This document shows positions 561 through 57,374 of a DNA stretch of 57,374 nucleotides, piece by piece (position 1 is the stretch's first letter; every line of letters begins with the position of its first letter). The position numbers and the translations under genes are program-made. The stretch is from Macrostomum lignano (lineage: Eukaryota). The stretch spans positions 1-57,374 of the forward strand of contig NIVC01002539.1 of the NCBI GenBank assembly GCA_002269645.1. Direction: 5' to 3'. Below the pieces are notes generated by a model. It made no database searches and had not been told where the DNA came from. It saw only the letters and a list, made by a program, of their open reading frames with translations.

Positions 561-590
561 AATTAACGCGAGACAGCATGTGTGCACTTA

Positions 591-745
591 AGACTCATGC
601 ATTTAAGATGCGCGCTTGTGCCAGACTCATGCATTTAAGATGCGCGCTTGTGCCAGACTCATGCATTTAAGATGCGCGCTTGTGCCAGACTCATGCATTT
701 AAGATGCGCGCTTGTGCCAGACTCATGCATTTAAGATTCGCGCTT
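591..745. repeat. 32-bp minisatellite (AGACTCATGCATTTAAGATGCGCGCTTGTGCC)
   Basis: Unit starts at 591, 623, 655, 687 and 719. Confidence 0.95.
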
Positions 746-1344
746 AATATTGCGCCCCGGGTGCTGAAGTGCCGTGAGAACCCAAATAAACAATGAGCAA
801 AGAACACAAACGCGTCTCAATAAGCGAGTTTTAAGAGACGAAAAGGTTAGAAATACGCCGAGGGCACAACTTGCGCATAGATGCATCTATTTTTAACAAG
901 GAATAAATAATTCTTAAATAAATTAACTTCTAAAGCACACATGAACCTCAGCTGACTGCCAGCATGGCTTCAAAATAGCAGGTCTAGTTAAAATTTGCAT
1001 GATACATTAGCCATGCATCATAAATAACTGGGCAATTAAAAAATTAACCCATTCAAGCCTCATTAGGTGCTTCAACAAGTTTAACGTAAACGTAAAAACG
1101 AAATTAATATTATTGAAAAAATAGTTCGTTATAAACCTAATACTCGTAGCAAGACGAAAGAAACTAAAAGAAAACTAATTGAAGCATTAGGCGGAACTAA
1201 CAACATTAAGACATACAGATATATTGTAGCTAAATATGAGATTTCGTTCATACATCGGCAGATGCCTTTTGAAACAGAGATCGGAAAGCGTCTTCACATT
1301 TGCCATATGAGGTCAGGTAAAAAGACCAGTTCATGGCTGCAAGC

Positions 1345-3416: not shown

Positions 3417-3681
3417 AGGCTTGACTTAGTTATAGGGGGCATCGTTCGGCGGATGCAGCGAGGAGGCGGAGAGAGGGGAGGGGAGGGAGGAGGGGGAGAA
3501 GAGAGCAAAGACACAAACCCCGAACAGGCCGGACAGAGGCTTCGCGGGGCCTGATTAAAAGTCTTTTTATAACACAATTTAATAGATTTGAAAACGAAAT
3601 CAAACGAAAAAAGGGCCAGAGTCGAATAAGCAAAGGTTAGGGCTCGAAAAGTTTAGCGAGGTTATAAAAAATTAAATTAAT

Positions 3682-3687
3682 TTTATT
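3682..3687 (-). terminator. Putative AATAAA polyadenylation signal of the malic enzyme gene
   Basis: TTTATT on the plus strand about 60 nt beyond the TAA stop. Confidence 0.5.
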
Positions 3688-3747
3688 AAGAAACTACTTG
3701 TGAGTAGTTTTCTTAAATAGTATAAATCGAAAATGACAACCATTATC

Positions 3748-9289: not shown

Positions 9290-9788
9290 TACTGCACTGC
9301 TGCTGCTGCGGGCTGCAGGCGATTCTAGGCAGGTAAGCCAGGCGAGCTGTCTATATTTGAAAAGTACATTTACAAATGGTACCTTACTATAGTATTGGCA
9401 ATAATATTTGCATGAAGGCTGCGGGTCAGCGCCAATATTGTACGCAGGCACACACTCCTACACACGCTCACGCAAGATGTACAGTGGCCCGAACTTTCTA
9501 ATACAAGGCTTCTAATAATAAGGCTTCTAATTTCTAATAAAGGCAAGGTTAAGATCCCAATACCTAATCTTAATCTTATCCTAAGATCTTAGATATAATT
9601 GGCTACAACTCTCTATTTTGGCCAAGAGTCAAACTGTGCTAGATACTAGATAGTTTTCAAGATTTAAAAGCATACTAGACACTAAAATAGCCTAACTGAT
9701 AAGTATATGGTATACACTTATCAGCCTATAGTTAGGCCTATGCCAAGCATTTTTTCTATGCCAAAGATTGCTACCTATTGAAACAATG

Positions 9789-10232
9789 CAGTGGCTGCGC
9801 AGTATCTCTAGTTGGGGGGGGGGGGGCAGTAGTTAGGTGGTCACCCCCTTCCCCTACCAATCAAAATTAAACAAAAAACATTTGGATTTGTTTTTCAAAC
9901 ACAAATTTTCTAATAAAGTAAAAATTATGAACAAATTATGATACACTTCCGACAAAATGAATGTGCAACATGAAAATTCTTATAAAAATGCATTTTTAAT
10001 CATTGATACAAGTTACATAGAAGGGGGTGACCATCTGCCCTCCCTTCCTAGGGTGTTTTTAAGGGCTGTGGAGATGGTGAGGTGGTCACCCCCTTGAGGC
10101 AGTGACCTGTGGTTACCCAGGGGCAGCTGCCCCCCACCCCCTTTGTGTCCCCCCCCCTATTGGAATAAGTTTCAAAAACCAGCGGACATGCGACACGGGT
10201 GCCAAAATTGTGCCCCCCCTGCGCTACCACTG
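9789..10232. mobile_element. Non-autonomous hAT-type MITE (444 bp)
   Basis: Termini CAGTGGCTGCGCAG ... CTGCGCTACCACTG (imperfect TIR) flanked by an exact 8-bp TSD AAACAATG (9781-9788 and 10233-10240). Internal inverted GGTGGTCACCCCCT motifs. Confidence 0.85.
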
Positions 10233-12223
10233 AAACAATGCTTGGTTACAGTAGAATAGGCTTAGGATCACTAATAAATAGACAATTATTAAAAATAGCA
10301 TTATAAATTTTTCTAGAAAATAGTTAAAAGATATTAGCATATTATTATTATAGTAATAATTAACTCTTATTTAGAAATTAAAACTTAAAAAATTGAATTC
10401 CTTGTTCAATTCTAAGCAAATGAATGATATTATAATAGCCTCTAAGCTTGCAAACACCAATTGATAAATAAGGATATCAGGATGTTGATAAAAATATTTA
10501 TTTACACTTGAATTTTCATGGGGGTCTAGGCCTAGTTGTTAAGTGGGAATTTGTATTTATTTATTATACTAAGAAAAGCAATAGTCAAGCCAGTATTTTG
10601 GAGGGGATAGTGCGCCAGTGTTTGACAGTATGCTGTGTACATTCAAATAGACTAAAAATCTAGAAGAGAGCAAATAGTGGCTATCATGTGAATAATAGAC
10701 GAATAGTGTGATAGGCCACCCTCTCCTGGCTGCGCTACTTGTACTAAGCGTTTTCAATCAGTAGGACAGTATAGAAAAGTAAGTGAAACATTGCTGTCAG
10801 TTGAAAATTAACTAATGAATTTAGTTGCATACAAAAAAGCTGCTGGGTGAGAGCTGGCTATGAAAGAAGAAAAGTACGAGCACTTAGGGAGACTAGAAAG
10901 AAATTTGTGGAGGTCGGAGGATTTAGCTAGATCCAACAATTGCAAAGACGGTGAAAATGCTTTTGGCCCCAGCTGAGGGGGCGATGACCCCCCCCCTTGG
11001 TCCTGCCTCTATTCGCCAATGCACTGATTAAACATGTTGAACATGTAAGGAAAGGTCGATGTTACGAGCTAGTTTTTATTGCTAAAGCAGACTTTCTTGC
11101 AAAATACGAAAGTTAAAAACTTCATCGTATAACGTTTGTTTTAGTTAAACAAATACAATTGTATAAAAGTTGAACAGAAAAAAATAATCTTTTCTTTATC
11201 TAATTTTTTTAAAAATTAACTCAACAAGCATATATTCTTTATATGATTTACAATATAAAGATAAATCATTAGCTTGACACGAAAACCCAAATTTGAAGTT
11301 TTTAATTTCTTCGAAAGGTTATCTTTCAGATTAACTTGATACATTGCTCATCGATCATGGTGGCTGCATGTCAAAGTGGTAATGTCAAAATGATTACAAA
11401 TATTTCATGGACGTCTTGAATAAAATAAGGAGCCTCGTCTAATTTATCCTGCTTCTGAATACTAATAAATGTGTATATTGATATATTAATATATATTATA
11501 TATTATCAATGTTAATGCTATGAAGCTGAGGTCAAGCTGACTCAGCTGAGGTATCAGCTGAGGTCAAGAATATGCCTGGTCTCTCAAACAGAAAAGCATC
11601 CCTCAAACAGTGCCTGGCCCCACCTCAAATTCACTAGCTAATTTTACTTCAATTTTACTTTGGGCTGCCAGTATTACAGCAGTTGTTAAGCAGTAGCAAA
11701 CCTAGAAATATTTTTTTAATATTGCAATTGCAACTAACAAACTAGATAATTATCATTATTCATGATGTTTATAACCTCATGATGTGATTTAAGAATTAAT
11801 AAATACTAAGGGTTTCCTATATTAATGCATTTCAAACAATGCTATTCTAATAGCTATACAGAAAAAAAAAACTATAAATCTCTTTAGAAAAAACTTTTTT
11901 ATTTTGTGCCCTAAATAATTGACTCATAGTTGTGTCAATGAGAATCTTGACTGGCATAAACATTTAATCTTTTAGTTCACAAAGGCCTAACATTTCCATA
12001 CATTTACTAGAATTTATTTAATCATATAGCTCTAAACAGAAAGTTTTTTTGTGTTGCTAACATACTAATTAATAAAATTTTCTTAACATTAACTCCTTCA
12101 TTTGCCTAAGCTGATAGAGACAAAAATGTAGAGACATTATAGAGACATGGTATAAATTTTATCCTTGCAGCTTGCATCTTACATTCAATAAAGTTTTTTA
12201 AAATAATTAAGTTTATTTGCTGC

Positions 12224-12868
12224 ATGCGTGCGGCAAAGCTCATTCTAGTGGCCATAGTGCCAATCGCTCTGTGCCTGCAGCTGCAGCGAGTGCTCCTGTC
12301 TGCTCAGCCTGCCATTGATGAGGCGCTGCTTCACACCGTGGCCAGGAAGCACGCGGTGCAGCTGCTCAGCATCGAGCGGGCCTACAAAGCTGTGGTGACC
12401 GATCTCGAGGCCAATTTCCCAGCTGTGAGATTCCTGCCTCCGGAGCGGCGAGAATGGATCTTCATCAACGCTGGAGGCTGGATGGGGGCCGTACACCTGT
12501 TGTACGCCTCCTTCACCGAGTACGTGCTGCTGTTTGGCACCGCTGTGGACACCAGCGGCCACTCCGGACGCTACTTTGCCAACGTGTCCGACACGCTTCT
12601 GTCCGGCAGCTTCGTCCAGTGGAAGGAGGGCAGTTTGGACACGAACAGCTACAAGGCTGGGGACACCGTGTACCACACTTGGGGCGAGGCCACTGCTGTA
12701 CAGTGGTCTGGCGGCACCTGGATGGTCGAATATGGCCGCGGCCTGCTGCCAACCACCCTGCCGTTCGCGCTGGCTGACTCTGTGTTTTCCACTCTTGACT
12801 GGTACTCTGCTTATAAGCTTGTGCGGCTGTACTGCTTGGCACTACTACGTTGCTATGGGCTGATGTAG
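12224..12868 (+). CDS. SIGMAR1: Sigma-1 receptor / ERG2 (C-8 sterol isomerase) family protein, 214 aa, intronless
   Basis: N-terminal hydrophobic segment, then WIFINAGGWMGA, LYASFTEYVLLFGT, GHSGRY, SDTLLSG, WMVEYGRG (ligand-binding Glu) and FALADSVFST. Confidence 0.95.
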   Translation: MRAAKLILVAIVPIALCLQLQRVLLSAQPAIDEALLHTVARKHAVQLLSIERAYKAVVTDLEANFPAVRFLPPERREWIFINAGGWMGAVHLLYASFTEYVLLFGTAVDTSGHSGRYFANVSDTLLSGSFVQWKEGSLDTNSYKAGDTVYHTWGEATAVQWSGGTWMVEYGRGLLPTTLPFALADSVFSTLDWYSAYKLVRLYCLALLRCYGLM

Positions 12869-13750
12869 CTAATAGCTGATGCGTTGCTATTGGCTGATGT
12901 AGCTAATGGCTGATGCGTTGCTATGGGCTGATGTAGCCAATAGCTAATGCGTTGCTATGGGCTGATGTAGCCAATAGCTGATGGGTTGCTATGAGCTGAT
13001 GTAGCTAATAGCTGATGGGTTGCTATGTGCTATGTAGCTAATAGCTGATGGGTTGCTATGGGCTGATGTAGCCAATAGCTAATGCGTTGCTATGGGCTGA
13101 TGTAGCCAATAGCTGATGGGTTGCTATGAGCTGATGTAGCTAATAGCTGATGGGTTGCTATGGGCTGATGTAGCTAATAGCTGATGGGTTGCTATGTGCT
13201 ATGTAGCTAATAGCTGATGGGTTGCTATGGGCTGATGTAGCTAATAGCTGATGGGTTGCTATGGGCTGATGTAGCCAATAGCTAATGCGTTGCTATGGGC
13301 TGATGTAGCCAATAGCTGATGGGTTGCTATGAGCTGATGTAGCTAATAGCTGATGGGTTGCTGTGGGCTGATGTAGCCAATAGCTAATGCGTTGCTATGG
13401 GCTGATGTAGCCAATAGCTGATGGGTTGCTATGGGCTGATGTAGCTAATAGCTGATGGGTTGCTATGTGCTATGTAGCTAATAGCTGATGGGTTGCTATG
13501 GGCTGATGTAGCTAATAGCTGATGGGTTGCTATGGGCTGATGTAGCTAATAGCTGATGGGTTGCTATGTGCTATGTAGCTAATAGCTGATGGGTTGCTAT
13601 GGGCTGATGTAGCTTATAGCTGATGCGTTGCTATGGGCTGATGTAGCTAATAGCTGATGGGTTGCTATGTGCTATGTAGCTAATAGCTGATGGGTTGCTA
13701 TGGGCTGATGTAGCTAATAGCTGATGCGTTGCTATGGGCTCATGTAGCTG
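12848..13750. repeat. 34-bp minisatellite, block 1
   Basis: Unit GCTAATAGCTGATGGGTTGCTATGGGCTGATGTA. The first unit overlaps the SIGMAR1 stop codon. Confidence 0.95.
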
Positions 13751-15444: not shown

Positions 15445-15589
15445 CTTGTATCGAAAATTATCAACTATGCTGCTGTTTCAAGGTATTTTACGCAACCGCT
15501 AAACTAAATGGGACTGGCAAGGAAATGCTTTTCGCCGTGTTTACATAGTCTATGGTCGGGGGAAAGCGAAGTAAATCACTCCCGATCCA

Positions 15590-16385
15590 CCCCTGAGAAT
15601 CACTCCTGATTTACCCCTGAGAATCACTCCTGATTTACCCTTGAGAATCACTCCTGATTTACCCCTGAGAATCACTCCTGATTTACCCTTGAGAATCACT
15701 CCTGATTTACCCCTGAGAATCACTCCTGATTTACCCCTAAGAATCACTCCTGATTTACCCCTGAGAATCACTCCTGATTTACCCTTGAGAATCACTCCTG
15801 ATTTACCCCTGAGAATCACTCCTGATTTACCCTTGAGAATCACTCCTGATTTACCCTTGAGAATCACTCCTGATTTACCCCTAAGAATCACTCCTGATTT
15901 ACCCCTGAGAATCACTCCTGATTTACCCCTGAGAATCACTCCTGATTTACCCCTGAGAATCACTCCTGATTTACCCCTGAGAATCACTCCTGATTTACCC
16001 TTGAGAATCACTCCTGATTTACCCCTGAGAATCACTCCTGATTTACCCCTGAGAATCACTCCTGATTTACCCCTGAAAATCACTCCTGATCCATCCCTGA
16101 GAATCACTCCTGATCCACCCCTGAGAATCACTCCTGATTTACCCCTGAGAATCACTCCTGATCCACCCCTGAGAATCACTCCTGATTTACCCCTGAGAAT
16201 CACTCCTGATCCACCCCTGAGAATCACTCCTGATTTACCCCTGAGAATCACTCCTGATCCACCCCTGAGAATCACTCCTGATTTACCCCTGAGAATCACT
16301 CCTGATCCATCCCTGAGAATCACTCCTGATCCACCCCTGAGAATCACTCCTGATCCACTCCTGAGAATCACTCCTGACCCCCTGA
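15590..16385. repeat. 24-bp minisatellite (TGAGAATCACTCCTGATTTACCCC)
   Basis: About 33 tandem units. Confidence 0.95.
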
Positions 16386-16861
16386 GAATTTGCTGAAGGC
16401 AAGTACAAATAAATTTATGCATACTACTTCAGGTAGACTACGCGAATTTAAATATTTTACTCGTTCATTCTTCAACTTTTGAATCAGTATTGAAATCGCC
16501 CCAACAAACTACCATTCACTTATAATGCTACCGATTCTGGGTAGTTTATGGATGGCTCAGTAACTCAACGCTCCCGCAAATTTCCTGTTGACCTTCTCAT
16601 TCTTCTCATTAAGTTCACAAAATTTACGGCTATTATTGGTTAAGCCAAAAGTTAAGCTGAAAGACTCTGAAAATATGATTTTACTCGAGTAGCCTCAGAC
16701 GCGATGCTTTGAAGTGGACAGTGGAACTGCGGTATGCATTGTGCTTCTGTGCATCTTCTGTCTTGGTGCTTAGTAAATAATTTAGGTACAGATATGGGTG
16801 CATTACTATCGTGTGGCTGTCTCAGCAAAGCGACGGCTAAAAGATGTGCTTGTCTAGCAGC

Positions 16862-24052: not shown

Positions 24053-39483
<15,431 letters not shown>

Positions 39484-40181: not shown

Positions 40182-41886
<1,705 letters not shown>

Positions 41887-45441: not shown

Positions 45442-45978
45442 ATGTACGGCAACCAGCCTTACCCGCAACCGGGCGCCCAGCCTCCGCCGTACGGTGGCGG
45501 CGGTGGCAGCGGCAAGCCGGCCCAGGTGTGCCTGAGCTGGGTGCCGGCCTCCAACGGTCAGGTCCCGCCCAGGGCGGTGCAGGTGGGCACCCAGCGCGAC
45601 GGCTCGCCCGTGTACGTCAGCCGGGCCCGCCACGGCAACGAGCTGATCCCGGCCAAGCTGGTGCAGGGCCACGGCCACGTCTGCCTGCCCTACGGCGGCA
45701 AGGAGCACCTTGTGCAGCAGTACGAGGTGCTGTGCGACTCCGGCATGCCTTGCTTCGGCTGCGGCTGGGCCTGGGCCCCCTGCCAGGGCTTCAACGTGCC
45801 GCCAAACGCCATCATTGGCGGACACACTGACAGGAACGAACCCCTTTACATCGGCAAGGGATTTGTTAATGGCGACGCGGCTGCCGGCAAGGTTTATAGT
45901 CCGCATCAGTGCGCCTACTTCAGCTGGGGCGGCGCTGAGCACTCTAGCAAGCAGTTTGAGATCCTTGTGGCCATGTGA
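45442..45978 (+). CDS. DM9-repeat (DUF3421) protein, putative mannose-binding lectin, 178 aa
   Basis: Two DM9 repeats: WVPASNGQVPPRAVQVG...YVSRARH...IPAKL...YGGKE...YEVL and W...VPPNAIIGG...LYIGKG...GKV...WGGAE...FEILV. Pro/Gly/Tyr-rich N-terminus. Confidence 0.92.
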   Translation: MYGNQPYPQPGAQPPPYGGGGGSGKPAQVCLSWVPASNGQVPPRAVQVGTQRDGSPVYVSRARHGNELIPAKLVQGHGHVCLPYGGKEHLVQQYEVLCDSGMPCFGCGWAWAPCQGFNVPPNAIIGGHTDRNEPLYIGKGFVNGDAAAGKVYSPHQCAYFSWGGAEHSSKQFEILVAM

Positions 45979-46901: not shown

Positions 46902-47166
46902 GCGGTTGTAACCTAGTGGTTAGAGGTCTGACTCGCGACTGAAAGGTCGGGGGTTCGATTCTCTACCCACTTGGAACAATTTGTGTCCCTGAGCATGACA
47001 CTTAACTCTGCATTGCTTGAGTTCACCCAGAATGGGTGCCAGCATTAGCTGGGGTAATTGAGGCTGTGTGGCGACCCCCCAGTCCCTTGGACTGAACAGC
47101 CGTACGCAGCCTTCATAAGCGCCGCGCAATAGCTGCGGCTGAGCTGTCGGTTGCAAATCTGTCCAT
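46902..47166 (+). mobile_element. tRNA/CORE-like SINE family 2, copy C
   Basis: GTAACCTAGTGGTTAGAG (A box), GGTTCGATTCTC (B box). The body matches copies A and B. Confidence 0.85.
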
Positions 47167-47949
47167 TGGGGCAGGTGTAATCAATATTATTAATATTATG
47201 TATGCATGAGTGCGTACAGTATCCGCGCGTTTAATTGTATGTGCTCAGAATTCAGCGCAATTGGCGCAAAATCGGTTTTGGGACGATGCCGCCGAAGGCG
47301 TTGCGCCAAAAAGGTGCTCACAACGAAGATCTAGCCAGGTTACCATGGAACCGACATTAATTATATGTAAGTATACAGTCCCATTTTTACAATGCAAAGG
47401 TGCAGGTCATGTATGGACTATGAAATGAAGAATGTATAATCTAGGCTCCACATCAACATGTGGCCTAGCTCAGGTCGTCACATCGAGAGCAAAAAGTACA
47501 TTTCTATAAAATCAATCGCATATATACGAGCTTCGAACATTACATTGTCAGTTCCATCCAGTGGATTTTCATTGCAGCATTCTGTATTTGCAATTGCTTC
47601 AGCCTTCAGATCAATTGGGTTCATCATCTCAGGCATCCATTGATGAGCTATCGACTCAACACAAAAGAAATACGTCAGTACAAAGGAATGGAAACGACGC
47701 AAAGCTGTCATTAAACATAATAGGTTGCAATTTTTAAGAGCCTTCTACACGTACTGCTACTAATAAAATCTATTGATTAATCATACAGGCTCAATATTAT
47801 ATTATTGGCATATAGCAGTACGTTACAATTACTGCTTTTATATAAATTGTACTGACGTAATATTTGATCGTTTAACGCAATGATAATTAATTTCTTGGTT
47901 TTGCTCGTAAACGGTTTACAGCATCGTCGATTTGTACTGCATCGCAGCT

Positions 47950-48195
47950 TAAAACTTCACAAGCTCGAAACTTCACAAGCTCGAAGCTACACAAGCTCGA
48001 AACTTCACAAGCTCGAAACTTCACAAGCTCGAAGCTACACAAGCTCGAAACTTCACAAGCTCGAAACTTCACAAGCTCGAAACTTCACAAGCTCGAAGCT
48101 TCACAAGCTCGAAACTTCACAAGCTCGAAACTTCACAAGCTCGAAACTTCACAAGCTCGAAACTTCACAAGCTGGAAGCATCACAAGCTGGAAAG
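47950..48195. repeat. 16-bp minisatellite (AAACTTCACAAGCTCG)
   Basis: About 15 units. Confidence 0.93.
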
Positions 48196-49066
48196 TTCGT
48201 AAGCTCAAAACACCCTCTTCATGAGAACCGAGAGTGGCAGCTTTAATCCAGCTCTAGTCATAACTCTTCACTCTCTTCTCACCAGCCCAAGCCAGGGCCT
48301 TGCGACGCAAAACTGCATCACCCAACAGTTGAGACGAGAACCGCGGGCGATTGCAATAACTTGAGGCTGAGACCTGGGAAAAGTTGACCGCTTGTTTGAC
48401 CACTGTGGAAATCTGACATGTTGCTGCAGAATGAGCGAGCGCACTGCCTGTAGTTGCACACAAACTCGTGACACATTACTACGTAATGTGCAGATAGAGC
48501 AGGGTTTTCAGATGTTTTGACGCAAAAAAACGCAAATTATACTACTATCTGAAAATGAAGTAAGTAGTATACAAAAACGCTATCCTAAGCGTGATATGGA
48601 AATATGTAGTCGTAATAATCCATGTGCTCATATATGTACATTAATTCCATGTACATTATTCCCTATCTATCTCAAATTGTACATTAATTCCATGTACATT
48701 AATCCCTATCCCAAATTGTCTATCCCCAATTCTACATGTACACTCACATTAATCTACAGTGTCATCCCCAGCGCGCGCACACCCCAAGATTACAACTCGA
48801 AACCCTACTACATGTACAATATCATCCAAATGAGTCAACACCCAAGTTTTACAAACCACGTTATATACATATTCCTATTTATATGTCAATTATTCAAAAT
48901 CTACATGTAGCTGATTACACTACTACCTTTAGTAGAGTTACAAATCAAGATTCTATTGAAAAAGACTGTATTCATATAGTTTTCACATTGGAAAAGCGTA
49001 TATTTTTTTCATTTCAATAATTGAAAAAGAGAGCAAAAACAGTAAGAGACGACAGCAAGTTGAGAC

Positions 49067-49525
49067 TTAATTATAGCCTGTACTACCAAACCCTCCTGCA
49101 CCGCGAATTGAGTGGCTGCCAGCGGCCTCCTCTTCGCCATTCCCTCTATAGAGATCCCTTACAACTACGGGAGCAATCATTACACGCTCCAAAACTAATT
49201 GAGCGATACGGTAGCCCCGAGTTATGAACCAGTCCGCACTGCCATGATTAAATATCACCACAGTCAATTCTCCAGTATAGTCAGGGTCGATCACGCCGGC
49301 GCCCACTTGTATAGACTTGCGCAACGCCAGCCCAGACCGGCCGGCAATCCGAGCGTAGGTCCCATCAGGCGGTTGGATCGAAATTCCGAGAGGCACCTGC
49401 GCAACCGACCCTGCCCGGACAACCACATCTTCAGAGGCAAAGAGATCGTAGCCAACAGAACCGATCGTCTGGCGAGCCGGCGGGCGGGCACCTTCAGTCA
49501 GCAGCGACACCTTTAAAGCAGCCAT
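49067..49525 (-). CDS. dut: Trimeric dUTPase, intronless, 152 aa
   Basis: All five motifs present: SVGYDL, IAGRSGLA, GVIDPDYTGEL, RIAQLV and RGAGGFGSTG. ATG at 49525 (the track start at 49570 is a GTG). Confidence 0.96.
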   Translation of the reverse strand: MAALKVSLLTEGARPPARQTIGSVGYDLFASEDVVVRAGSVAQVPLGISIQPPDGTYARIAGRSGLALRKSIQVGAGVIDPDYTGELTVVIFNHGSADWFITRGYRIAQLVLERVMIAPVVVRDLYRGNGEEEAAGSHSIRGAGGFGSTGYN

Positions 49526-49866
49526 GATGACGTAGCTGGAATTGGTGAGTTTGCGGTTATAATCAGTCACAGTGTTTACACACGGAATGGTTTATAGTTT
49601 TTTTTCATTCTAAATATCATTAATCGAAAAAATGGTAAAAATCTCAACGCAATATTTAAATTTTGCAAAACAATTTATTTGAAAAGAATGTGCATGTGGA
49701 TAGCGTAAGTGTGCATACACAACATTTATAGCGAGTCGAGATATATACTATGGGTGCATGAAAATTTAGATTGAGTGCAGACACAACACTTGATATAAAA
49801 CAAGATATGTACAAGGTGCATGAAAATAAAAATGCGTGCAGACACAACATTAAATTGTCAACAATA

Positions 49867-50763
49867 TTAACAAAGCCCCGAGCCGGGGAATAATCTGTCC
49901 AACTCTTCAGCGACCTCCTCATGGAGGTCAGCCTCATACACCCGCCGCTCCTTCACCGCCGTGTAATACGCACGCTCCTCAGAGCGGCTGCCAAAACAAT
50001 AGTCGGCTAGCTAGAAAAGGGAATGGGCGGGGAAAGTTTTCCGCTATAATGCATTGAAATTTTGAATCAGCAATTAGTTGCTAAATGAAAAGTTTTCGGA
50101 TAAAATGCAATTATTTACCATGTCCAAGTCTGGCTCGCGGCACCAACGCCGCAAAAACTCTTGGTAGGTTGCCTCGCCATCGTCGTCAGCAGCACCAACA
50201 GCAGCCTTTTCACTAGCAGCAGCGTCAGTACTGTGCTGCTGCTGCTGCTGCTGCAGCCCCATCCGAGGGGCTAAATTGATGCCCAATCGGCAGCGGCTCG
50301 TCTTCTTATTCTTCAGTTGCCGCGGTTGCTGATTCAGACTGCTGCTGCTGCCTTCAATAGTCGCGGCGGCAGCGGTGGCGACTGCGGCATATTCGCAAGG
50401 GCTGGCTCCCAGCAGCCCACAGTCATTACCGGGCTGGCAACATTCATTGCCGCAGTAGCTACCGCCGCACCAACCTTGAAAGTCGTCAACGCTGCTAGTG
50501 TCTCCACTGATGCTACTGCTGCTGCTGCTGCTGCTGCCGCTACTACTGTTGTTGCTGTTGTCAGACTTACACGCCAGACTTAAAACCGGTCGGGCGGTAG
50601 ATCGAAGCGGCGGGTTCCGGCCTACTCGACCGCCCCCAACCCCGCACCACAGGATTGAGGGAGATCGGCCGCAACGCAGTGCTACAGCCACCGCAACTAA
50701 CTGCGACGGCTCTTCTACACTGCTGCTGCTGCTGCTGCTGCTGCTACCGTTGCCGCTATTCAT
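49867..50763 (-). CDS. Hypothetical two-exon protein, 262 aa
   Basis: Exons 50763-50119 (ATG|GTAAAT) and 50010-49867 (acceptor CCCTTTTCTAG), 108-bp phase-0 intron. TATAAAAA about 70 nt upstream. Low-complexity N-terminus and a charged, probably helical C-terminus. Confidence 0.6.
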
Positions 50764-51034
50764 TGTGTGTGTGTGTGTGTGGTTGATCGTAAATTTGAAA
50801 AGATTTTCAGCCGCGCAGGGGTCTCGTTTTTATAGTGATTTTACGAAGTCTCTCATTGGCTCCGCCAGTCCGCAAGCAAGCAAGCAAGCAAGCAAGTCTG
50901 CCCAAACCTCAGCCCAGCCAGCGAGTTAGTCAGTCTGACTCAACAGCGAGCTATACCTGTTTTAACAATAAAATTTCAGATTCTCAAAAATTTCAGAGTC
51001 TAGGTTATTTCAATTTCGGCTGCAGTTCGGCTGC

Positions 51035-51358
51035 AGTTCAATCGGTGGCACTCGTATCCCCCGGACTCACCTGCAGCCGCAGGTGAAGAAGCTTTCTACG
51101 ACTGACGGCGGCAGCGGCAGCGGCAGCAGCTACAAGTGGTGGCACTCGTACCCCCCGGACTCGACTGAGCTCGAGAGCTGGGCTGCTGGCCTGACTGATG
51201 AACAGCTTTTCAAGACCCCGACCCATCAGATTGGGCCTCACGAGCCGGCCTTTGCTGCCTGGGCTGCTGTGATCAAGGAGCAGAACAAGCGAATTAAGCT
51301 AATCTACAGCAGCGACAAGGCCAAACTGCAGCAGCTGCCTACAATGCGTGTCGAGTGA
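51035..51358 (+). CDS. Possible small protein or gene fragment in the palindrome spacer
   Basis: Exon-like GC-rich frame 51083-51358 without ATG. The peptide WHSYPPDS is encoded twice in different frames. Confidence 0.3.
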   Translation, partial: SSIGGTRIPRTHLQPQVKKLSTTDGGSGSGSSYKWWHSYPPDSTELESWAAGLTDEQLFKTPTHQIGPHEPAFAAWAAVIKEQNKRIKLIYSSDKAKLQQLPTMRVE

Positions 51359-52286
51359 AATGATTAAGACAATTGCTAAAAAGACTCTTTTTGTGTGGGC
51401 TGTATAATCATTGCTTTTTGTGTGGGAATATTCATATTCGTAATGTGTGGGCTGTATAATCATTGCTTTTGTGGGGATATATGGTTTGTATAATAATAAC
51501 TCTACTGTAGAACCTTGTTTATGTGCTTGAAAACAAGCTCTGCAGTGAAGCGGGCGGCACGTTAATAGTGAGCAACATTTTGTTGGCCGTTAGTTTGGCT
51601 GAGATGAAATCGTTAGCGTGCAGGTCAGCGCAGAGGGTTGTTATTATTTTCGCAAATGTGTCTCGACATCGACAATATCCGCTGTGAAGGCTACTTCATA
51701 TTCGTAGCCTTTTGCTTTAAATTTAGGCAGGGCCTTTGATGTTGATGCTGATTAACTCTCAATTGTATAATTTTTACTTGTGGGAATTTGTGTTTCTGCG
51801 ATTATATCAACTCTAATAATGTGAAAACCATCTTTTGAATAAACTGGAATTGACAAATACCATCTCTGGAATTAAAATGGTCTTATTTCATTTGTTTTTT
51901 GAAATTGAAATAACCTAGACTCTGAAATTTTTGAGAATCTGAAATTTTATTGTTAAAACAGGTATAGCTCGCTGTTGAGTCAGACTGACTAACTCGCTGG
52001 CTGGGCTGAGGTTTGGGCAGACTTGCTTGCTTGCTTGCTTGCTTGCGGACTGGCGGAGCCAATGAGAGACTTCGTAAAATCACTATAAAAACGAGACCCC
52101 TGCGCGGCTGAAAATCTTTTCAAATTTACGATCAACCACACACACACACACACACAATGAATAGCGGCAACGGTAGCAGCAGCAGCAGCAGCAGCAGCAG
52201 TGTAGAAGAGCCGTCGCAGTTAGTTGCGGTGGCTGTAGCACTGCGTTGCGGCCGATCTCCCTCAATCCTGTGGTGCGGGGTTGGGG

Positions 52287-55200
52287 CACAGACCAATAAG
52301 TATAACTAGACTGCGCATCCAGCATTGCTTGCGTGGGCTCGTTTTTTGACAAAATGACAAAGCAAAAAATGGTCCTCTCTACCCCAGCCCAAAACGATCG
52401 ATATTTTTGGCTTGGGGAAGACTGGCCCTTCTTCAGCTGTCTGCACTGGCCTTTTTTAAATTAACATGTATATTAATGCGGCTTGGGGACCACAATAGCA
52501 ATGCTATACTAACCTTAAACAGCTAAGCAAAGTTATTAAAAAATTAATAATTTCTCAAAACGAAATGGAAGAACAACCTGAATCTTCTAAATTGCCGAGG
52601 AAAAGAAAAGGAAATTACGGCAGCTTTTGCTGCGCTGCTGGCTGCTCGAACAACTCAGCAATGTCTTTGGCGGGAGTGTCCTTTCATACTTTTCCAAAGG
52701 ACAAGGAAATAAGGAAAAAGTGGCTGATAGCGCTGAAAAGAAAAGATTTTGAGCCATCGCCATGCTCAATGCATTTTGAGGAATCTTGCTTCAAAGAGCA
52801 ATTTGCAGGCTTTCTGCCTAGCGTCAAAAGACGGCTATATCCAAATGCCGTTCCTTCCATCTTCCCGGCGTTCCCTGACCATCTGCAGCCGAAAGCTGAG
52901 AAGAAACGGAAGACTGCCACCGCGGCCGCAGCTCGCGAAGTTGATTTCGCTGCATTTTGTAAATCAACAGAGAGCAGCGAGCCGGAAGCTCCAGTGGCTG
53001 CCAAGGAAGATGAAGATCCTGGACCGGACATCCATGTTAACTGCGTGCCCAGAGAAGAATTCGACAAGAAGGTGAGAGCACTTAAAAATCTTCGGCGCAG
53101 ATACAGAAGGCTTCTATCTACTCATAGCCGGTTCAAGAAAAGTGCAAAGGCTGTTGAAATCTTAAGGCGGTCGCTCCAGAGCAAGTACCGCAAAATTCGA
53201 TCACTGCGCTCAAAGCATAGGCAAATTAAACAAAGAGCCAAGACCCTGAAAGATGTGATTCGAGAGTTAAGGGCCAAATGTATTTTGAATGAAGCTGCTG
53301 CATCTCGGCTGAATTTCTTGACCTCCGATTCACTGCTTAGCAGCATTTTGCCAAGCAAGATTACCAAGAGGACAAGAATATTCTCCCACGAAGTGCGGAA
53401 ATTCGCCTCCACATTGCACTTTTACAGCCCGAAGGCCTATGCGTATGTGAGACAGTACTTTCAGCTTCCGCATCCAGCTTCGCTTAGAAGATGGCTCTCG
53501 AATGCGAAATGCCTTCCAGGATTTTGTGACCAAGCCTTTCAGGAACTTTCTCGGCGACGCAGCTCCAATGATGACCGATCCTTCGACTACTGCAACGTTG
53601 TAGCTGATGAAATGTCACTGGAAGCGATGGTTGAGTGGAATTCAAATGAAGGCAGTTTCTTTGGCTATGTTGACAAAGGCGATGGCAAGTCAACTGATCA
53701 GGAGGCAACTTCAGCATTGGTAGTGATGGCAGTGGGTCTCAAGAGCTATTGGAAGCTACCTTTAGGATATTTTCTAGTGAGCGGAGTTGATGGCGAATTT
53801 CTTTCAAGTGTCGTAGAGGAATCAATCCAGCGGCTCTACCAGGTTGGCGTTATTGCCTCATCATTTACATGCGATGGGACTCAGCACAATATTCGAGCGA
53901 TCGAGCTTCTTGGTGCCAGAATAAGCTCTCCCAATGAGATAGTTTCCTCTTTCCCACACCCCTGCGATCCCGGCATTCAGGTTTCAGCCTTCTTGGATGT
54001 GCCGCACATGTTGAAGCTGATTCGAAACCAGTGGCAGTCCCTGGGAACATTTGTTTGGCCGGACAGAGGAAATATTGATTGGAAATATGTGTGCACGTTG
54101 CAGCAAGTACAGGAGAGCCATGGACTCAGACTGGGCAATAAGCTGAGCAGGCATCACATTAACTTTGCTAATTTAAAGATGAAAGTTTATTTGGCCTCAC
54201 AACTTTTTAGTAAGTCGGTGGCTGACTCATTACGATGGGTGCACAAGCAAGGCTTGGCCGGATTTGATCATTCCGATGTATTAGTGACAGCAGATTTTAT
54301 TGAGCACATCAATGATCTGTTCGATGCGTTCAACTCGAAGCGACTGGTAAATTATGGGGCTAAAATGGCTCTAAGAGCTGACAACCAGTCTGACTGGATT
54401 GACTTCTTCACTGACTCGATCCAGCTTCTCAAGAGCTTAGAAACTCCAGCTAGATGCAAAATCGTTGACACTGCAAAGAAGACAGGATTTTTAGGCTTCA
54501 TCACCAATTGCCATGCCGTTATTGCGCTTGCCAAGTATTTATTTTCAACTGGCGAATTCTTCTTTCTTTGCACTTACAAGCTGTCTCAGGACTTTCTAGA
54601 ACTATTCTTTAATGCAGTCAGGCTTCGAAATGGCTGGAACCACAACCCGACACCAAAGCAGTTTCGCTCGGCATTTAGGCAGCTGCTGGTGCATGCCGGA
54701 GGTGGGATTCTCCAGTCTGTCAGCCCGAATGTGAAGCAGCAGGATGCCACCATTCAACTGTCCTTGTCATGCCTACCATCATCAGCTGAATCAGCACAGA
54801 AGCAGTGGAAGATGAAAGTTCAGAATGATATGGGACTGAGTCTTGAATCCATCCAGCACTGCATGAATGCATCTAATTGTGAGATTTGCCAGTCTATTGT
54901 GTACTATATTGCCGGAGCAGTTGTGCGAAGCATGTTGAAAGTTGTCGAATGTGCTACGTGCAGGTCAGCTCTGACTGCCAGCTCCGAGACGCCACCAGCT
55001 TTTCGTGCCCCTTGCTCACTTGTTGCCTTGAAGAATGTTTTGAACAAGGAAGGAACTGGCGGCTTGATTTTTCCCAGCAGCGATGTCTTCCGTGTGCTGC
55101 TCAGTGCTGAGTCTGTTATTCGACGTGCCAGCTATAACAGCCAATTCTCCAGTGACGTAGCAGTTCACGAGACTTTGCGCATGTCGAGCAATCTATTCCC

Positions 55201-55768
55201 TGAGCTTGACTCGCATTCGGCATCCGCAAGCAGCGGCATTGAGTCGCACAAGCTCCATTTAATTCGAGTCATGGCCGGGCTCTTCATAAAGATCAGAATG
55301 AAAAAACTAGCTAAAGAACTTTCTCGCGCAGGAAGAAGACCAGGAAGGAGGCAGAGACTACTTCGAGCAGCGATATTTCTTAATCTATAGTATATTCGAA
55401 ACCAGGTGAGCTATTTATATACTTTTATTACTGCTTCTATGCTATCAGCAACAACAAAAAGGTCTCATTTTGTCTGCAAGCGTTTTTGTACGGTTTTTTA
55501 GTTTTTAATAAATCGAAAAATAATACTGGATTTAAACTGTTAAATTGCTAGTTGCACATAAAGTTGGTTAAATGGTTAGCAATCCGTGTTCCATGGCAAA
55601 AGGCAACAATTAATACAGCGGGCCCAATGACAGAGGGGTTGGAAGGGAAAGGAAGCCAAAAATATCGATCGTGAGGGGGTGGGAGCTGGGGTGCCATTTT
55701 TCCTACTTGGAAAGAGGCACACATTTCTTGCCCCACACGCGCAGTCTAGTTATACTTATTGGTCTGTG
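52287..55768 (+). mobile_element. Complete P-superfamily (THAP9/Galileo-like) DNA transposon, 3482 bp
   Basis: Perfect 30-bp TIR CACAGACCAATAAGTATAACTAGACTGCGC. 7-bp TSD GTTGGGG (52280-52286 and 55769-55775), with the empty site preserved in the left arm. Perfect 20-bp subterminal inverted repeat at 52394-52413 and 55653-55672. Confidence 0.96.
52565..55390 (+). CDS. P-element/THAP9-type transposase, 941 aa, intronless
   Basis: THAP zinc finger CCAAGC...W...CSMHF...AVPSIF, coiled coil, LHFYSPKAYAYVR, ADEMSL, TCDG, DVPHMLKLIRN, KMKVYLASQLFS and KLSQDFLELFF. Confidence 0.96.
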   Translation: MEEQPESSKLPRKRKGNYGSFCCAAGCSNNSAMSLAGVSFHTFPKDKEIRKKWLIALKRKDFEPSPCSMHFEESCFKEQFAGFLPSVKRRLYPNAVPSIFPAFPDHLQPKAEKKRKTATAAAAREVDFAAFCKSTESSEPEAPVAAKEDEDPGPDIHVNCVPREEFDKKVRALKNLRRRYRRLLSTHSRFKKSAKAVEILRRSLQSKYRKIRSLRSKHRQIKQRAKTLKDVIRELRAKCILNEAAASRLNFLTSDSLLSSILPSKITKRTRIFSHEVRKFASTLHFYSPKAYAYVRQYFQLPHPASLRRWLSNAKCLPGFCDQAFQELSRRRSSNDDRSFDYCNVVADEMSLEAMVEWNSNEGSFFGYVDKGDGKSTDQEATSALVVMAVGLKSYWKLPLGYFLVSGVDGEFLSSVVEESIQRLYQVGVIASSFTCDGTQHNIRAIELLGARISSPNEIVSSFPHPCDPGIQVSAFLDVPHMLKLIRNQWQSLGTFVWPDRGNIDWKYVCTLQQVQESHGLRLGNKLSRHHINFANLKMKVYLASQLFSKSVADSLRWVHKQGLAGFDHSDVLVTADFIEHINDLFDAFNSKRLVNYGAKMALRADNQSDWIDFFTDSIQLLKSLETPARCKIVDTAKKTGFLGFITNCHAVIALAKYLFSTGEFFFLCTYKLSQDFLELFFNAVRLRNGWNHNPTPKQFRSAFRQLLVHAGGGILQSVSPNVKQQDATIQLSLSCLPSSAESAQKQWKMKVQNDMGLSLESIQHCMNASNCEICQSIVYYIAGAVVRSMLKVVECATCRSALTASSETPPAFRAPCSLVALKNVLNKEGTGGLIFPSSDVFRVLLSAESVIRRASYNSQFSSDVAVHETLRMSSNLFPELDSHSASASSGIESHKLHLIRVMAGLFIKIRMKKLAKELSRAGRRPGRRQRLLRAAIFLNL

Positions 55769-56877
55769 GTTGGGGGCGGTCGAGTAGGCCGGAACCCGCC
55801 GCTTCGATCTACCGCCCGACCGGTTTTAAGTCTGGCGTGTAAGTCTGACAACAGCAACAACAGTAGTAGCGGCAGCAGCAGCAGCAGCAGCAGTAGCATC
55901 AGTGGAGACACTAGCAGCGTTGACGACTTTCAAGGTTGGTGCGGCGGTAGCTACTGCGGCAATGAATGTTGCCAGCCCGGTAATGACTGTGGGCTGCTGG
56001 GCCAGCCCTTGCGAATATGCCGCAGTCGCCACCGCTGCCGCCGCGACTATTGAAGGCAGCAGCAGCAGTCTGAATCAGCAACCGCGGCAACTGAAGAATA
56101 AGAAGACGAGCCGCTGCCGATTGGGCATCAATTTAGCCCCTCGGATGGGGCTGCAGCAGCAGCAGCAGCAGCACAGTACTGACGCTGCTGCTAGTGAAAA
56201 GGCTGCTGTTGGTGCTGCTGACGACGATGGCGAGGCAACCTACCAAAGTTTTTGCGGCGTTGGTGCCGCGAGCCAGACTTGGACATGGTAAATAATTGCA
56301 TTTTATCCGAAAACTTTTCATTTAGCAACTAATTGCTGATTCAAAATTTCAATGCATTATAGCGGAAAACTTTCCCCGCCCATTCCCTTTTCTAGCTAGC
56401 CGACTATTGTTTTGGCAGCCGCTCTGAGGAGCGTGCGTATTACACGGCGGTGAAGGAGCGGCGGTGTATGAGGCTGACCTCCATGAGGAGGTCGCTGAAG
56501 AGTTGGACAGATTATTCCCCGGCTCGGGGCTTTGTTAATATTGTTGACAATTTAATGTTGTGTCTGCACGCATTTTTATTTTCATGCACCTTGTACATAT
56601 CTTGTTTTATATCAAGTGTTGTGTCTGCACTCAATCTAAATTTTCATGCACCCATAGTATATATCTCGACTCGCTATAAATGTTGTGTATGCACACTTAC
56701 GCTATCCACATGCACATTCTTTTCAAATAAATTGTTTTGCAAAATTTAAATATTGCGTTGAGATTTTTACCATTTTTTCGATTAATGAATATAGAATGAA
56801 AAAAAACTATAAACCATTCCGTGTGTAAACACTGTGACTGATTATAACCGCAAACCACCAATTCCAGCTACGTCATC

Positions 56878-57334
56878 ATGGCTGGCTTTAAAGGTGTCGC
56901 TGCTGACTGAAGGTGCCCGCCCGCCGGCTCGCCAGACGATCGGTTCTGTTGGCTACGATCTCTTTGCCTCTGAAGATGTGGTTGTCCGGGCAGGGTCGGT
57001 TGCGCAGGTGCCTCTCGGAATTTCGATCCAACCGCCTGATGGGACCTACGCTCGGATTGCCGGCCGGTCTGGGCTGGCGTTGCGCAAGTCTATACAAGTG
57101 GGCGCCGGCGTGATCGACCCTGACTATACTGGAGAATTGACTGTGGTGATATTTAATCATGGCAGTGCGACTGGTTCATAACTCGGGCTACCGTATCGCT
57201 CAATTAGTTTTGGAGCGTGTAATGATTGCTCCCGTAGTTGTAAGGGATCTCTATAGAGGAATGGCGAAGAGGAGGCCGCTGGCAGCCACTCAATTCGCGG
57301 TGCAGGAGGGTTTGGTAGTACAGGCTATAATTAA
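56878..57334 (+). pseudogene. dut: Second dUTPase copy with four single-G indels
   Basis: 457 nt versus 459 nt for the left copy: +G near 56884, -G near 57169, 57185 and 57258. Confidence 0.8.
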
Positions 57335-57374
57335 GTCTCAACTTGCTGTTGTCTCTTACTGTTTTTGCTCTCTT

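What the first reader, a model, noticed from the sequence alone, without database searches (positions are those of the whole stretch)
49027..57374. Large gene-bearing palindrome: twin dUTPase plus orphan-gene cassettes around a unique spacer
With the P element removed, the locus is a >=1.99-kb arm, an 883-bp spacer (51018-51900) and a >=1.99-kb inverted arm, nearly identical. Each arm has a central promoter-like region (TATAAAAA facing outward; CCAAT, GC-box and Inr-like motifs facing inward), a two-exon orphan gene and an intronless dUTPase, both transcribed outward. The compact, intron-poor layout contrasts with the flanking host genes. It may be an undescribed foldback or giant-TIR mobile element, or an endogenised DNA-virus fragment carrying a nucleotide-sanitising enzyme (inference). 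No integrase or polymerase is seen.
Basis: partly seen in the sequence, partly recalled or inferred. Interest (0 to 1): 0.85.

Follow-up and report, generated by a model that had tools for sequence, protein, structure and literature searches.

The report
Rearranged Maverick-like virus remnant, palindromic
The 2-kb inverted repeat is really in the sequence, but its "orphan" gene and dUTPase are leftovers of a Maverick/Polinton-type virus-like element in the flatworm Macrostomum lignano, later hit by a P-type transposon, so it is an ordinary though instructive piece of genomic debris and not a new kind of mobile element.

Summary
The window is the whole contig NIVC01002539.1 of the Macrostomum lignano Mlig_3_7 assembly (PacBio/Canu). 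The palindrome is real in the sequence. The left arm is 49027-51017, the spacer is 883 bp, and the right arm starts at 51901 and is cut by the contig end. The arms are 99.3% identical (2 substitutions, 10 short indels).

The 3.48-kb insert is a P-superfamily transposon with 30-nt TIRs, a 7-8 bp target duplication and an uninterrupted 941-aa transposase ORF.

The "orphan" gene is not an orphan. The 3' part of its exon 1 is 67-83% identical to the N-terminus of a M. lignano protein-primed DNA polymerase B, and the match stops exactly at the predicted splice donor. The spacer holds a further 82-codon scrap of that polymerase.

The dUTPase groups (85/100 bootstrap, plus a shared rare 10-residue insertion) with a M. 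lignano dUTPase. That dUTPase lies directly downstream of a protein-primed PolB in a Maverick/adintovirus-like element, which itself has ≥2-kb perfect inverted repeats.

Best reading: a rearranged, non-autonomous Maverick-like remnant. I could not test whether the inverted duplication is genomic or assembly-made, its outer ends, its copy number or its expression.

The parts
49027..51017 (.). Left arm of the inverted repeat. Its outer limit is set only by where the contig cuts the right arm.
49067..49525 (-). dUTPase, left copy: open 152-codon frame from ATG, with all five trimeric-dUTPase motifs and a 10-residue insertion before motif 5.
   Evidence: Pfam PF00692 E 6.5e-31; PDB alignment to 3p48; linker lengths
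49536..49541 (-). TTCCAG, 10 nt upstream of the dUTPase ATG. It fits the M. lignano SL trans-splice acceptor motif [T/C]TNCAG. Possible operon-type processing is inferred.
   Evidence: sequence; motif from PMC8629364
49674..49679 (-). AATAAA downstream of the upstream cistron, about 140 nt before the dUTPase acceptor-like site.
   Evidence: sequence
49867..50010 (-). Predicted exon 2 of the upstream cistron, left copy (47 codons plus stop). No homologue found.
   Evidence: searches
50011..50118 (-). Predicted 108-nt intron (GTAAAT...TTCTAG), left copy.
50119..50763 (-). Exon 1 of the upstream cistron, left copy (215 codons, low-complexity 5' part). Its last ~80 codons are homologous to residues 42-120 of the M. 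lignano pPolB UniRef A0A1I8GWG8, and the match ends at the splice donor.
   Evidence: phmmer E 7e-22, 83%; BLASTP 67%, E 1e-21; identity of the hit
50820..50834 (-). TATA-box motif of the left copy, 57 nt upstream of the ATG.
51018..51900 (.). Unique spacer (883 nt), not itself palindromic.
51083..51358 (+). 91-codon ORF in the spacer, GTG-initiated in the ORF list. No family or homologue found; whether it is real is open.
51505..51739 (-). Scrap of a protein-primed PolB gene (equivalent to residues ~136-217 of a ≥778-residue protein). It is truncated at both ends and read in three pieces (two frame changes).
   Evidence: tblastn E 4e-23, 63-84% identity
51901..52286 (.). Right arm, inner part (upstream region, TATA at 52084-52098, start of the exon-1 copy).
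52157..56287 (+). Exon-1 copy of the right arm. Broken by one transposon insertion and three short indels relative to the left copy.
52287..55768 (+). P-superfamily DNA transposon: perfect 30-nt TIRs (52287-52316, 55739-55768) and target duplication GTTGGGG (8 bp if the ambiguous terminal G is counted).
52565..55390 (+). Uninterrupted 941-codon P-type transposase ORF (THAP, HTH, split RNase-H-like fold with GTP-binding insertion domain).
55769..57374 (.). Right arm, outer part, ending at the contig end.
56396..56538 (+). Exon-2 copy of the right arm. One single-base indel relative to the left copy.
56878..57334 (+). dUTPase copy of the right arm. Frame disrupted by four single-base indels, all in homopolymer runs, with no substitutions.

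Best explanation
The locus is a rearranged, non-autonomous remnant of a Maverick/Polinton-type (adintovirus-like) endogenous virus-like element of Macrostomum lignano.

Each arm carries the upstream region and first coding exon of the element's protein-primed DNA polymerase gene. Almost all of the polymerase body is missing. After it comes the element's dUTPase gene, about 140 nt beyond a poly(A) signal and behind a trans-splice-type acceptor. The spacer holds another scrap of the same polymerase.

The segment was copied in inverted orientation. This probably happened by the same process that gives a related element of this genome its kilobase-long, perfectly identical inverted repeats that cut through genes. 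That process would be template switching or terminal-repeat extension in a protein-primed linear replicon (inferred), or else an ordinary replication fold-back in the host. A P-type transposon then inserted into one arm.

In an intact element the dUTPase would keep dUTP low while the element's own polymerase copies its DNA. That role is established for herpes-, pox- and retroviral dUTPases and is inferred here. In this remnant only the left dUTPase copy is open, and nothing else needed for replication or integration is present.

Shown: the repeat, the transposon, the homologies and the dUTPase grouping. Inferred: the order of events, the mechanism of duplication, the operon-like expression and the enzyme's role.
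For: - Source: contig of GCA_002269645.1 / NIVC01, which is M. lignano Mlig_3_7.
- Exon 1, residues 134-215, versus UniRef A0A1I8GWG8 'DNA-directed DNA polymerase', M. lignano: E 7e-22, 83% and 67% by BLASTP. It was the only hit among 1.84 billion representatives, and the match ends at the splice donor.
- That protein carries a DNA_pol_B_2 signal. It is 36% identical to a pPolB on a metagenome contig that also carries a Capsid_N-like ORF.
- Spacer scrap of the same polymerase: E 4e-23.
- The M. lignano dUTPases P0043 and P0241 lie directly downstream of a pPolB (DNA_pol_B_2, E 2e-19). A PLA2-like gene and a P-loop ATPase follow them, and a deoxynucleoside kinase lies upstream of the pPolB. PLA2-like genes are described as typical of Alpha adintoviruses (PMC8502044).
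- The window dUTPase is sister to P0043 in 85 of 100 NJ bootstraps. The two share a motif4-motif5 linker of 35 and 34 residues, against 25 in 99 of 119 sequences.
- The window dUTPase scores lower against fly, shrimp and human dUTPases (101, 96, 94 bits) than against yeast and chlorovirus ones (114, 112). Its closest non-flatworm relatives sit on gene-dense virus-like contigs.
- The related element in the interior of a 440-kb contig has ≥2-kb inverted repeats of 97-100% identity around an 8.4-kb core, and their inner edge cuts the ATPase ORF.
- The empty site in the left arm and the filled site in the right arm show two physically distinct copies.
Against: - No integrase, capsid, protease, packaging ATPase or full polymerase is in the window. 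The assignment therefore rests on two short polymerase homologies and a dUTPase tree built from 140 columns, with two long branches.
- The polymerase scrap lies upstream of exon 1 on the same strand. A single deletion plus one inverted duplication does not produce that order, so the history is more complex than modelled.
- A0A1I8GWG8 is an automatic gene model. Its fusion of exon 1 to the polymerase body could be an annotation error.
- The palindrome sits at a contig end of a Canu assembly of a neopolyploid with 180-312 Mb of duplicated sequence.
- Neither gene is annotated in the GenBank record, so expression is unknown.
- The host's canonical dUTPase was not identified, so the direction of transfer is open.
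Confidence: 0.6

Rival explanations
1. The inverted duplication is an assembly product. The true locus has one arm plus the spacer, and the contig turns back along a second haplotype or homeologue that carries the P-type insertion. The Maverick-derived content would still be real.
For: - The right arm runs into the contig end.
- The assembly is PacBio/Canu, polished with Pilon, from a line with extra chromosomes and 180-312 Mb of duplicated sequence.
- Differences between the arms are 10 indels to 2 substitutions, half of them in homopolymers and all coding ones in the contig-terminal copy. This is the signature of consensus error where short reads map ambiguously. It shows that this end is poorly supported.
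Against: - A missed-adapter fold-back read gives a palindrome with no spacer or only an adapter. Here 883 nt of unique, non-palindromic sequence separate arms whose inner ends mirror each other exactly.
- The junction from spacer to inverted arm to transposon must exist in some molecule.
- A comparable ≥2-kb perfect inverted repeat lies in the interior of a 440-kb contig of the same assembly.
Confidence: 0.2
2. These are host genes. The dUTPase is the flatworm's own (or a recent paralogue) and exon 1 belongs to a host gene. Maverick-like elements captured copies of both, and the palindrome is a one-off local inverted duplication of a host locus.
For: - The left dUTPase copy is open and keeps all five motifs.
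- TATA box, canonical splice sites, poly(A) signal and an SL-type acceptor fit host gene architecture.
- Flanking genes are ordinary host genes: malic enzyme, sigma-1 receptor, DM9.
- No canonical M. lignano dUTPase was identified to exclude this.
Against: - The window dUTPase scores worse against animal dUTPases than against fungal, chloroviral and virus-like metagenomic ones.
- Its nearest relative is element-borne.
- Exon 1 and a polymerase scrap occur together within 1.5 kb, which is hard to explain without an element.
- Neither gene passed the 'core genes' filter used for the GenBank annotation. That filter removed non-coding transcripts and those overlapping repeats.
Confidence: 0.12
3. 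The palindrome is a functional unit in its own right. It would be either a short derivative element made almost entirely of giant terminal repeats, or a hairpin-RNA locus whose read-through transcript folds into a ~2-kb duplex and yields small RNAs against Maverick-like polymerase and dUTPase transcripts.
For: - Arms are near-identical over 2 kb with a short loop.
- The content is element-derived.
- A related element has giant gene-cutting inverted repeats.
Against: - No termini, target duplication or further copies could be seen.
- The P-type insertion now interrupts one arm.
- No transcript or small-RNA data are available, and nothing in the sequence requires this reading.
Confidence: 0.08

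Closest known systems
Maverick/Polinton elements and adintoviruses (integrating linear dsDNA elements that encode a protein-primed PolB)
   Same: Homology to a protein-primed family-B polymerase (two fragments). The dUTPase is sister to one encoded directly after a pPolB, in an element that also carries PLA2-like and P-loop ATPase genes. Long inverted repeats occur in the related element. dUTPase genes have been noted in related midsize linear dsDNA viruses (PMC8502044).
   Different: The window has no integrase, capsid genes, protease, packaging ATPase or complete polymerase. Its termini and 6-bp target duplication are unseen. The repeats face each other across 883 nt and do not bound a 15-20 kb genome.
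Maverick-like element on M. lignano contigs NIVC01000272.1 and NIVC01004009.1
   Same: Same genome. The dUTPase lies downstream of the polymerase gene in the same orientation. It has ≥2-kb inverted repeats of 97-100% identity that cut through a gene. Its dUTPase shares the rare linker insertion.
   Different: Only the dUTPase is recognisably shared (50% identity). Its polymerase is not detectably similar to the one matched by the window, so it is a different lineage. It keeps an 8.4-kb core.
Terminal-repeat expansion in linear DNA replicons (poxvirus and adenovirus ITRs, linear plasmids)
   Same: Perfectly identical inverted copies whose boundary falls inside genes, making the genes within them diploid. 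This comparison rests on established knowledge.
   Different: Here the copies are integrated in a chromosome, the ends are unknown, and the mechanism is inferred, not shown.
Foldback (FB) transposons
   Same: Long inverted arms around a short middle.
   Different: FB arms are made of tandem subrepeats and carry no genes. These arms are unique sequence with two genes.
P-element superfamily (P, THAP9-type transposases), for the insert only
   Same: THAP DNA-binding domain, RNase-H-like catalytic fold split by a GTP-binding insertion domain, ~30-nt TIRs and a 7-8 bp target duplication.
   Different: A single uninterrupted 941-codon ORF, whereas the Drosophila P element has a multi-exon gene (own knowledge).

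Membership tests
Maverick/Polinton (polintovirus, adintovirus-like) | [quoted passage not shown] | tested here: inconclusive
   Only fragments are present: an exon-1 homologue and an 82-codon scrap. No catalytic domain is in the window.
Maverick/Polinton (polintovirus, adintovirus-like) | Retroviral-type (rve) integrase | tested here: not met
   No rve-type ORF appeared in the Pfam scans of window ORFs or in the ORF lists.
Maverick/Polinton (polintovirus, adintovirus-like) | [quoted passage not shown] | tested here: not met
   No ORF of suitable size flanks the arms. tblastx against the related elements matches only the dUTPase.
Maverick/Polinton (polintovirus, adintovirus-like) | Terminal inverted repeats at the element ends with a 6-bp target duplication | not testable with these tools
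   The right arm is cut by the contig end. No inverted match to the inner arm end lies in the left flank.
Trimeric dUTPase (PF00692) | Five conserved motifs including the C-terminal RGxxGFGSTG arm | tested here: met
   Left copy: Pfam E 6.5e-31. The alignment to yeast Dut1 (3p48) covers all motifs. The right copy is frame-disrupted.
P-element superfamily (the insert) | THAP domain plus RNase-H-like transposase with GTP-binding insertion domain | tested here: met
   PF05485, PF12017, PF21787, PF21788 and PF21789, all above their cut-offs.
P-element superfamily (the insert) | Short TIRs and a 7-8 bp target-site duplication | tested here: met
   30-nt perfect TIRs. GTTGGGG is duplicated, and the empty site is kept in the other arm.
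Foldback elements | Arms composed of tandem subrepeats, with little or no coding content | tested here: not met
   Within the arms there are only trinucleotide runs and one 61-nt two-copy repeat. Each arm carries two reading frames.
Hairpin-RNA / small-RNA generating inverted repeat | Read-through transcript and small RNAs mapping to both arms | not testable with these tools

The most novel reading that the evidence does not exclude
Macrostomum lignano harbours at least two undescribed lineages of Maverick/adintovirus-like endogenous viruses. They carry nucleotide-metabolism genes (dUTPase, and in one lineage a deoxynucleoside kinase as well) and generate kilobase-long, perfectly identical, gene-cutting inverted repeats. 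On this reading the window shows an extreme derivative made almost entirely of such repeats. It may be kept identical by arm-to-arm conversion, or used by the host as a hairpin source of small RNAs against these elements.
Probability: 0.25. Interest if true: 0.6.

Novelty: new member of a known kind. Interest (0 to 1): 0.38.

Why it matters
The result turns an apparent "orphan gene plus twin dUTPase palindrome" into an annotatable remnant of a virus-like element. It shows that the held literature has no account of Maverick/Polinton-type elements in Macrostomum. It also points to flatworm elements that pair a protein-primed polymerase with dUTPase and a nucleoside kinase, a gene set better known from large DNA viruses.

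For users of the Mlig_3_7 assembly it flags a contig end whose second arm probably carries uncorrected indels. It also flags a P-type transposon with an uninterrupted transposase ORF. None of this opens a long-standing question.

Tried and rejected
- Exact look-ups of the window's transposase, dUTPase, sigma-1 receptor ORF and DM9 ORF found no record. The source contig came only through the homologue search.
- Rfam found nothing in the window.
- The word-indexed search with the masked 262-residue 'orphan' protein found nothing at E ≤ 10. Only the exhaustive phmmer search found the polymerase hit.
- Pfam and PHROGs gave nothing for exon 2, the 91-codon spacer ORF or the 83-codon ORF.
- blastn and tblastx of the locus against the related elements L002 and L008 matched only the dUTPase.
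- A weak tblastn match of polymerase residues 534-615 to the spacer (E 0.12) was rejected. It overlaps the real scrap in another frame and contains a stop.
- A search for a terminal repeat of the inner arm end in the left flank found nothing.
- IMG/VR scans with the polymerase and with the dUTPase found no relatives. The metagenome scan gave only two distant polymerase loci.
- The encoding contig of A0A1I8GWG8 is not on record, so the intact gene order of that lineage could not be read.
- A missed-adapter fold-back read was considered and rejected because of the 883-nt unique spacer and the one-sided transposon insertion.
- No reconstruction I tried (a single deletion, an inversion, or tandem copies) accounts cleanly for the polymerase scrap lying upstream of exon 1. 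I leave the history as unresolved.
Full report
**Source.** A homologue search with a flanking ORF returned a 100% match on a 57374-base contig. Its record is NCBI GCA_002269645.1, NIVC01002539.1. NIVC01 is the Mlig_3_7 assembly of the flatworm Macrostomum lignano, line DV1. It was assembled from PacBio reads with Canu 1.4, polished with Pilon and scaffolded with SSPACE. The assembly holds 180 Mb of duplicated non-repetitive blocks, or 312 Mb when repeat-annotated regions are counted. The GenBank annotation was restricted to transcripts that are coding and do not overlap repeats (PMC5730564). The window is therefore a whole contig, and the right arm is cut by a contig end.

**The observation.**
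- The inverted repeat is as described: left arm 49027-51017, unique spacer 51018-51900, right arm 51901-52286 and 55769-57374.
- After removal of the insert, the arms align over 1994 columns with 2 mismatches and 10 short indels, 99.3% identity.
- Every difference inside a reading frame is an indel. There are four in the dUTPase, all in homopolymer runs, three in exon 1 and one in exon 2. All open frames are in the left arm.
- An indel-to-substitution ratio of 10:2 is what residual PacBio consensus error looks like. The differences also sit in the copy at the contig end, and the region is one where short reads map ambiguously.
- By contrast, the inverted repeats of a related element in the interior of a large contig are 100% identical over 1478 and 265 nt.
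- I therefore think the two arms are identical or nearly so in the genome. This is an inference.

**The insert.** Positions 52287-55768 form a P-superfamily transposon.
- It has perfect 30-nt TIRs and a duplicated GTTGGGG target. The uninterrupted target is still present in the left arm.
- It carries an uninterrupted 941-codon ORF with THAP, P-transposase HTH, RNase-H-like N and C parts and the GTP-binding insertion domain.
- The empty site in one arm and the filled site in the other show that the arms are two physically different DNA copies. The insertion came after the duplication, or it distinguishes two alleles.

**The 'orphan' gene.**
- The predicted gene is exon 1 at 50763-50119, a 108-nt GT...AG intron, and exon 2 at 50010-49867.
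- A TATA motif lies 57 nt upstream of the ATG in each arm.
- A word-indexed search of 5.8 billion proteins found nothing.
- An exhaustive phmmer search of 1.84 billion representatives found exactly one hit, E 7e-22, 83% identity over residues 134-215.
- The hit is UniRef100_A0A1I8GWG8, 'DNA-directed DNA polymerase', Macrostomum lignano.
- BLASTP gives 56 of 83 identical residues, and the match ends at ...YQEFLRRWCREPDLDM. That is the last residue before the predicted splice donor in the window and residue 120 of the hit.
- Beyond that residue the hit is a protein-primed family-B polymerase. It has a marginal DNA_pol_B_2 match (E 1e-5). It is 36% identical to a polymerase with a strong DNA_pol_B_2 match (E 3e-46) on a metagenome contig that also carries a Capsid_N-like ORF.
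- A tblastn of the hit against the window found a second significant match. Residues about 136-217 lie on the minus strand of the spacer (51505-51739) in three pieces, 63-84% identical, joint E 4e-23.
- The 'orphan' exon is thus the first coding exon of a polymerase gene of a virus-like element, and a further scrap of that polymerase lies in the spacer. Exon 2 and the 91-codon spacer ORF remain without relatives.

**The dUTPase.**
- The left copy (49525-49067) is open and matches PF00692 at E 6.5e-31. It aligns to yeast Dut1 through all five motifs, with a 10-residue insertion before motif 5.
- No protein in the large collection is more than 54% identical to it.
- Against solved structures it scores higher with yeast (114 bits), chlorovirus (112, 109) and Arabidopsis (107) than with fly (101), shrimp (96) or human (94) enzymes.
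- Two of its nearest relatives, P0006 and P0005, lie on gene-dense metagenome contigs. These carry thymidine kinase, N-myristoyltransferase, a cap methyltransferase, a DNA methyltransferase and several DUF families. I read these contigs as large DNA viruses from my own knowledge; this was not tested.
- The one M. lignano protein among the top hits, P0043 (50% identity), lies directly downstream of a pPolB (DNA_pol_B_2 E 2e-19). A PLA2-like ORF and a P-loop ATPase ORF follow it.
- A second copy of that locus, in the interior of a 440-kb contig, adds a deoxynucleoside kinase upstream of the polymerase. Its flanks are co-linear with the first, so the two are homeologues or alleles, not separate insertions.
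- PLA2-like genes are described as characteristic of one class of adintoviruses, and dUTPases have been noted in related midsize linear dsDNA viruses (PMC8502044).
- In a neighbour-joining analysis of 42 sequences and 140 columns, which excluded the linker insertion, the window dUTPase is sister to P0043 in 85 of 100 replicates.
- The two share a motif4-motif5 linker of 35 and 34 residues, against 25 in 99 of 119 sequences.
- Both are long branches, so attraction cannot be excluded. The shared insertion is independent support.

**A precedent for the palindrome.** In the 440-kb contig, the polymerase-dUTPase element is bracketed by inverted repeats of at least 2 kb at 97-100% identity. They surround an 8.4-kb core, their inner edge falls inside the ATPase ORF, and they run off the fetched locus. 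Kilobase-long, perfectly identical, gene-cutting inverted repeats are therefore a feature of such elements in this genome. That example is not at a contig end.

**What the window lacks.**
- There is no integrase, capsid, protease, packaging ATPase or polymerase catalytic domain.
- There is no second copy of the arm elsewhere in the contig.
- There is no terminal repeat in the left flank that matches the inner arm end.
- The arms are not made of tandem subrepeats.
- The locus is a remnant, not an element.

**How it is put together.** On the minus strand the order is: polymerase scrap, 487 nt, upstream region, exon 1, intron, exon 2, about 340 nt, dUTPase. In the related lineage the dUTPase follows the polymerase in the same orientation. 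The arm therefore looks like a polymerase-dUTPase module from which nearly all of the polymerase body has been lost. The scrap lying upstream of exon 1 is not explained by one deletion and one inverted duplication. The history involved at least one more rearrangement or a second fragment, and I could not resolve it.

**Expression (inference).**
- The dUTPase ATG is preceded at 10 nt by TTCCAG. This fits the [T/C]TNCAG motif enriched at M. lignano spliced-leader acceptor sites.
- The nearest upstream AATAAA is about 140 nt away. Operon spacings in this species peak near 100 bp (PMC8629364).
- An operon-like arrangement is therefore plausible, but no expression data were available. Neither gene is in the GenBank annotation.

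**Is the palindrome genomic?**
- For: 883 nt of unique, non-palindromic spacer; exactly mirrored inner arm ends; a one-sided transposon insertion; and the precedent inside a large contig.
- Against: its position at a contig end in a redundant assembly of a neopolyploid.
- I put about 0.75 on a genomic inverted duplication and about 0.8 on the Maverick-type origin of its content, which gives 0.6 for the combined explanation.

**Comparison with what is known.** The content belongs with Maverick/Polinton/adintovirus-type elements by homology, but the window fails the membership test for an element of that kind. The insert is a regular member of the P superfamily. The held literature has no description of Maverick/Polinton elements or of dUTPases in Macrostomum. 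I rate the finding a new member of a known kind and of moderate interest.

Noticed in passing
window 52287-55768: P-superfamily transposon with perfect 30-nt TIRs, a clean 7-8 bp target duplication and an uninterrupted 941-codon transposase ORF. The empty target is preserved in the other arm, so the insertion is recent.
   Followed up: yes
L008 (NIVC01000272.1) 1-13701; L002 (NIVC01004009.1): Maverick/adintovirus-like element of M. lignano. Its core carries deoxynucleoside kinase, pPolB (read as three consecutive ORFs; whether the two interruptions are introns or damage was not determined), dUTPase, a PLA2-like gene and a P-loop ATPase. It lies between ≥2-kb inverted repeats of 97-100% identity whose inner edge cuts the ATPase ORF. 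The two contigs are homeologous or allelic copies of one insertion.
   Followed up: partly
window 30831-33068: PIF/Harbinger-type pair: a 358-codon DDE_Tnp_4 transposase ORF (minus strand) and a 271-codon Myb/SANT-like ORF (plus strand), both open.
   Followed up: partly
window 46904-47166, 33430-33623, 35660-35886: Repeat of about 200 nt with a tRNA-like 5' part, in three copies at 87-88% identity. It looks like a SINE.
   Followed up: no
window 1262-7900, 15550-16420, 29180-29820, 38290-39150, 40500-41640, 47898-48265: Very dense minisatellites and a long (CTAT)n-type tract, several of them inside introns of a malic-enzyme gene (exons at about 3.7-9.5 kb, minus strand). They create long spurious ORFs in all frames.
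   Followed up: no
window 45442-45978 and 12224-12868: Single-ORF DM9-repeat gene (Pfam E 3e-52) and a sigma-1 receptor gene. The receptor's best relatives are only 50-57% identical and are spread over molluscs, annelids, cnidarians and vertebrates.
   Followed up: partly
L003, L005 (metagenome contigs): The closest non-flatworm relatives of the window dUTPase lie on gene-dense contigs with thymidine kinase, N-myristoyltransferase, mRNA cap methyltransferase and DUF5824, DUF5754, DUF5832 and DUF5792 families. These contigs look like large DNA viruses.
   Followed up: no
window 51028-51068 and 51121-51162; 49711-49849: Short direct repeats: a 42-nt pair (86% identical) at the start of the spacer ORF, and a 61-nt-spaced pair (71% identical over 45 nt by the repeat finder; 77% over a 79-nt BLAST alignment) in the region between exon 2 and the dUTPase. 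Meaning unknown.
   Followed up: no
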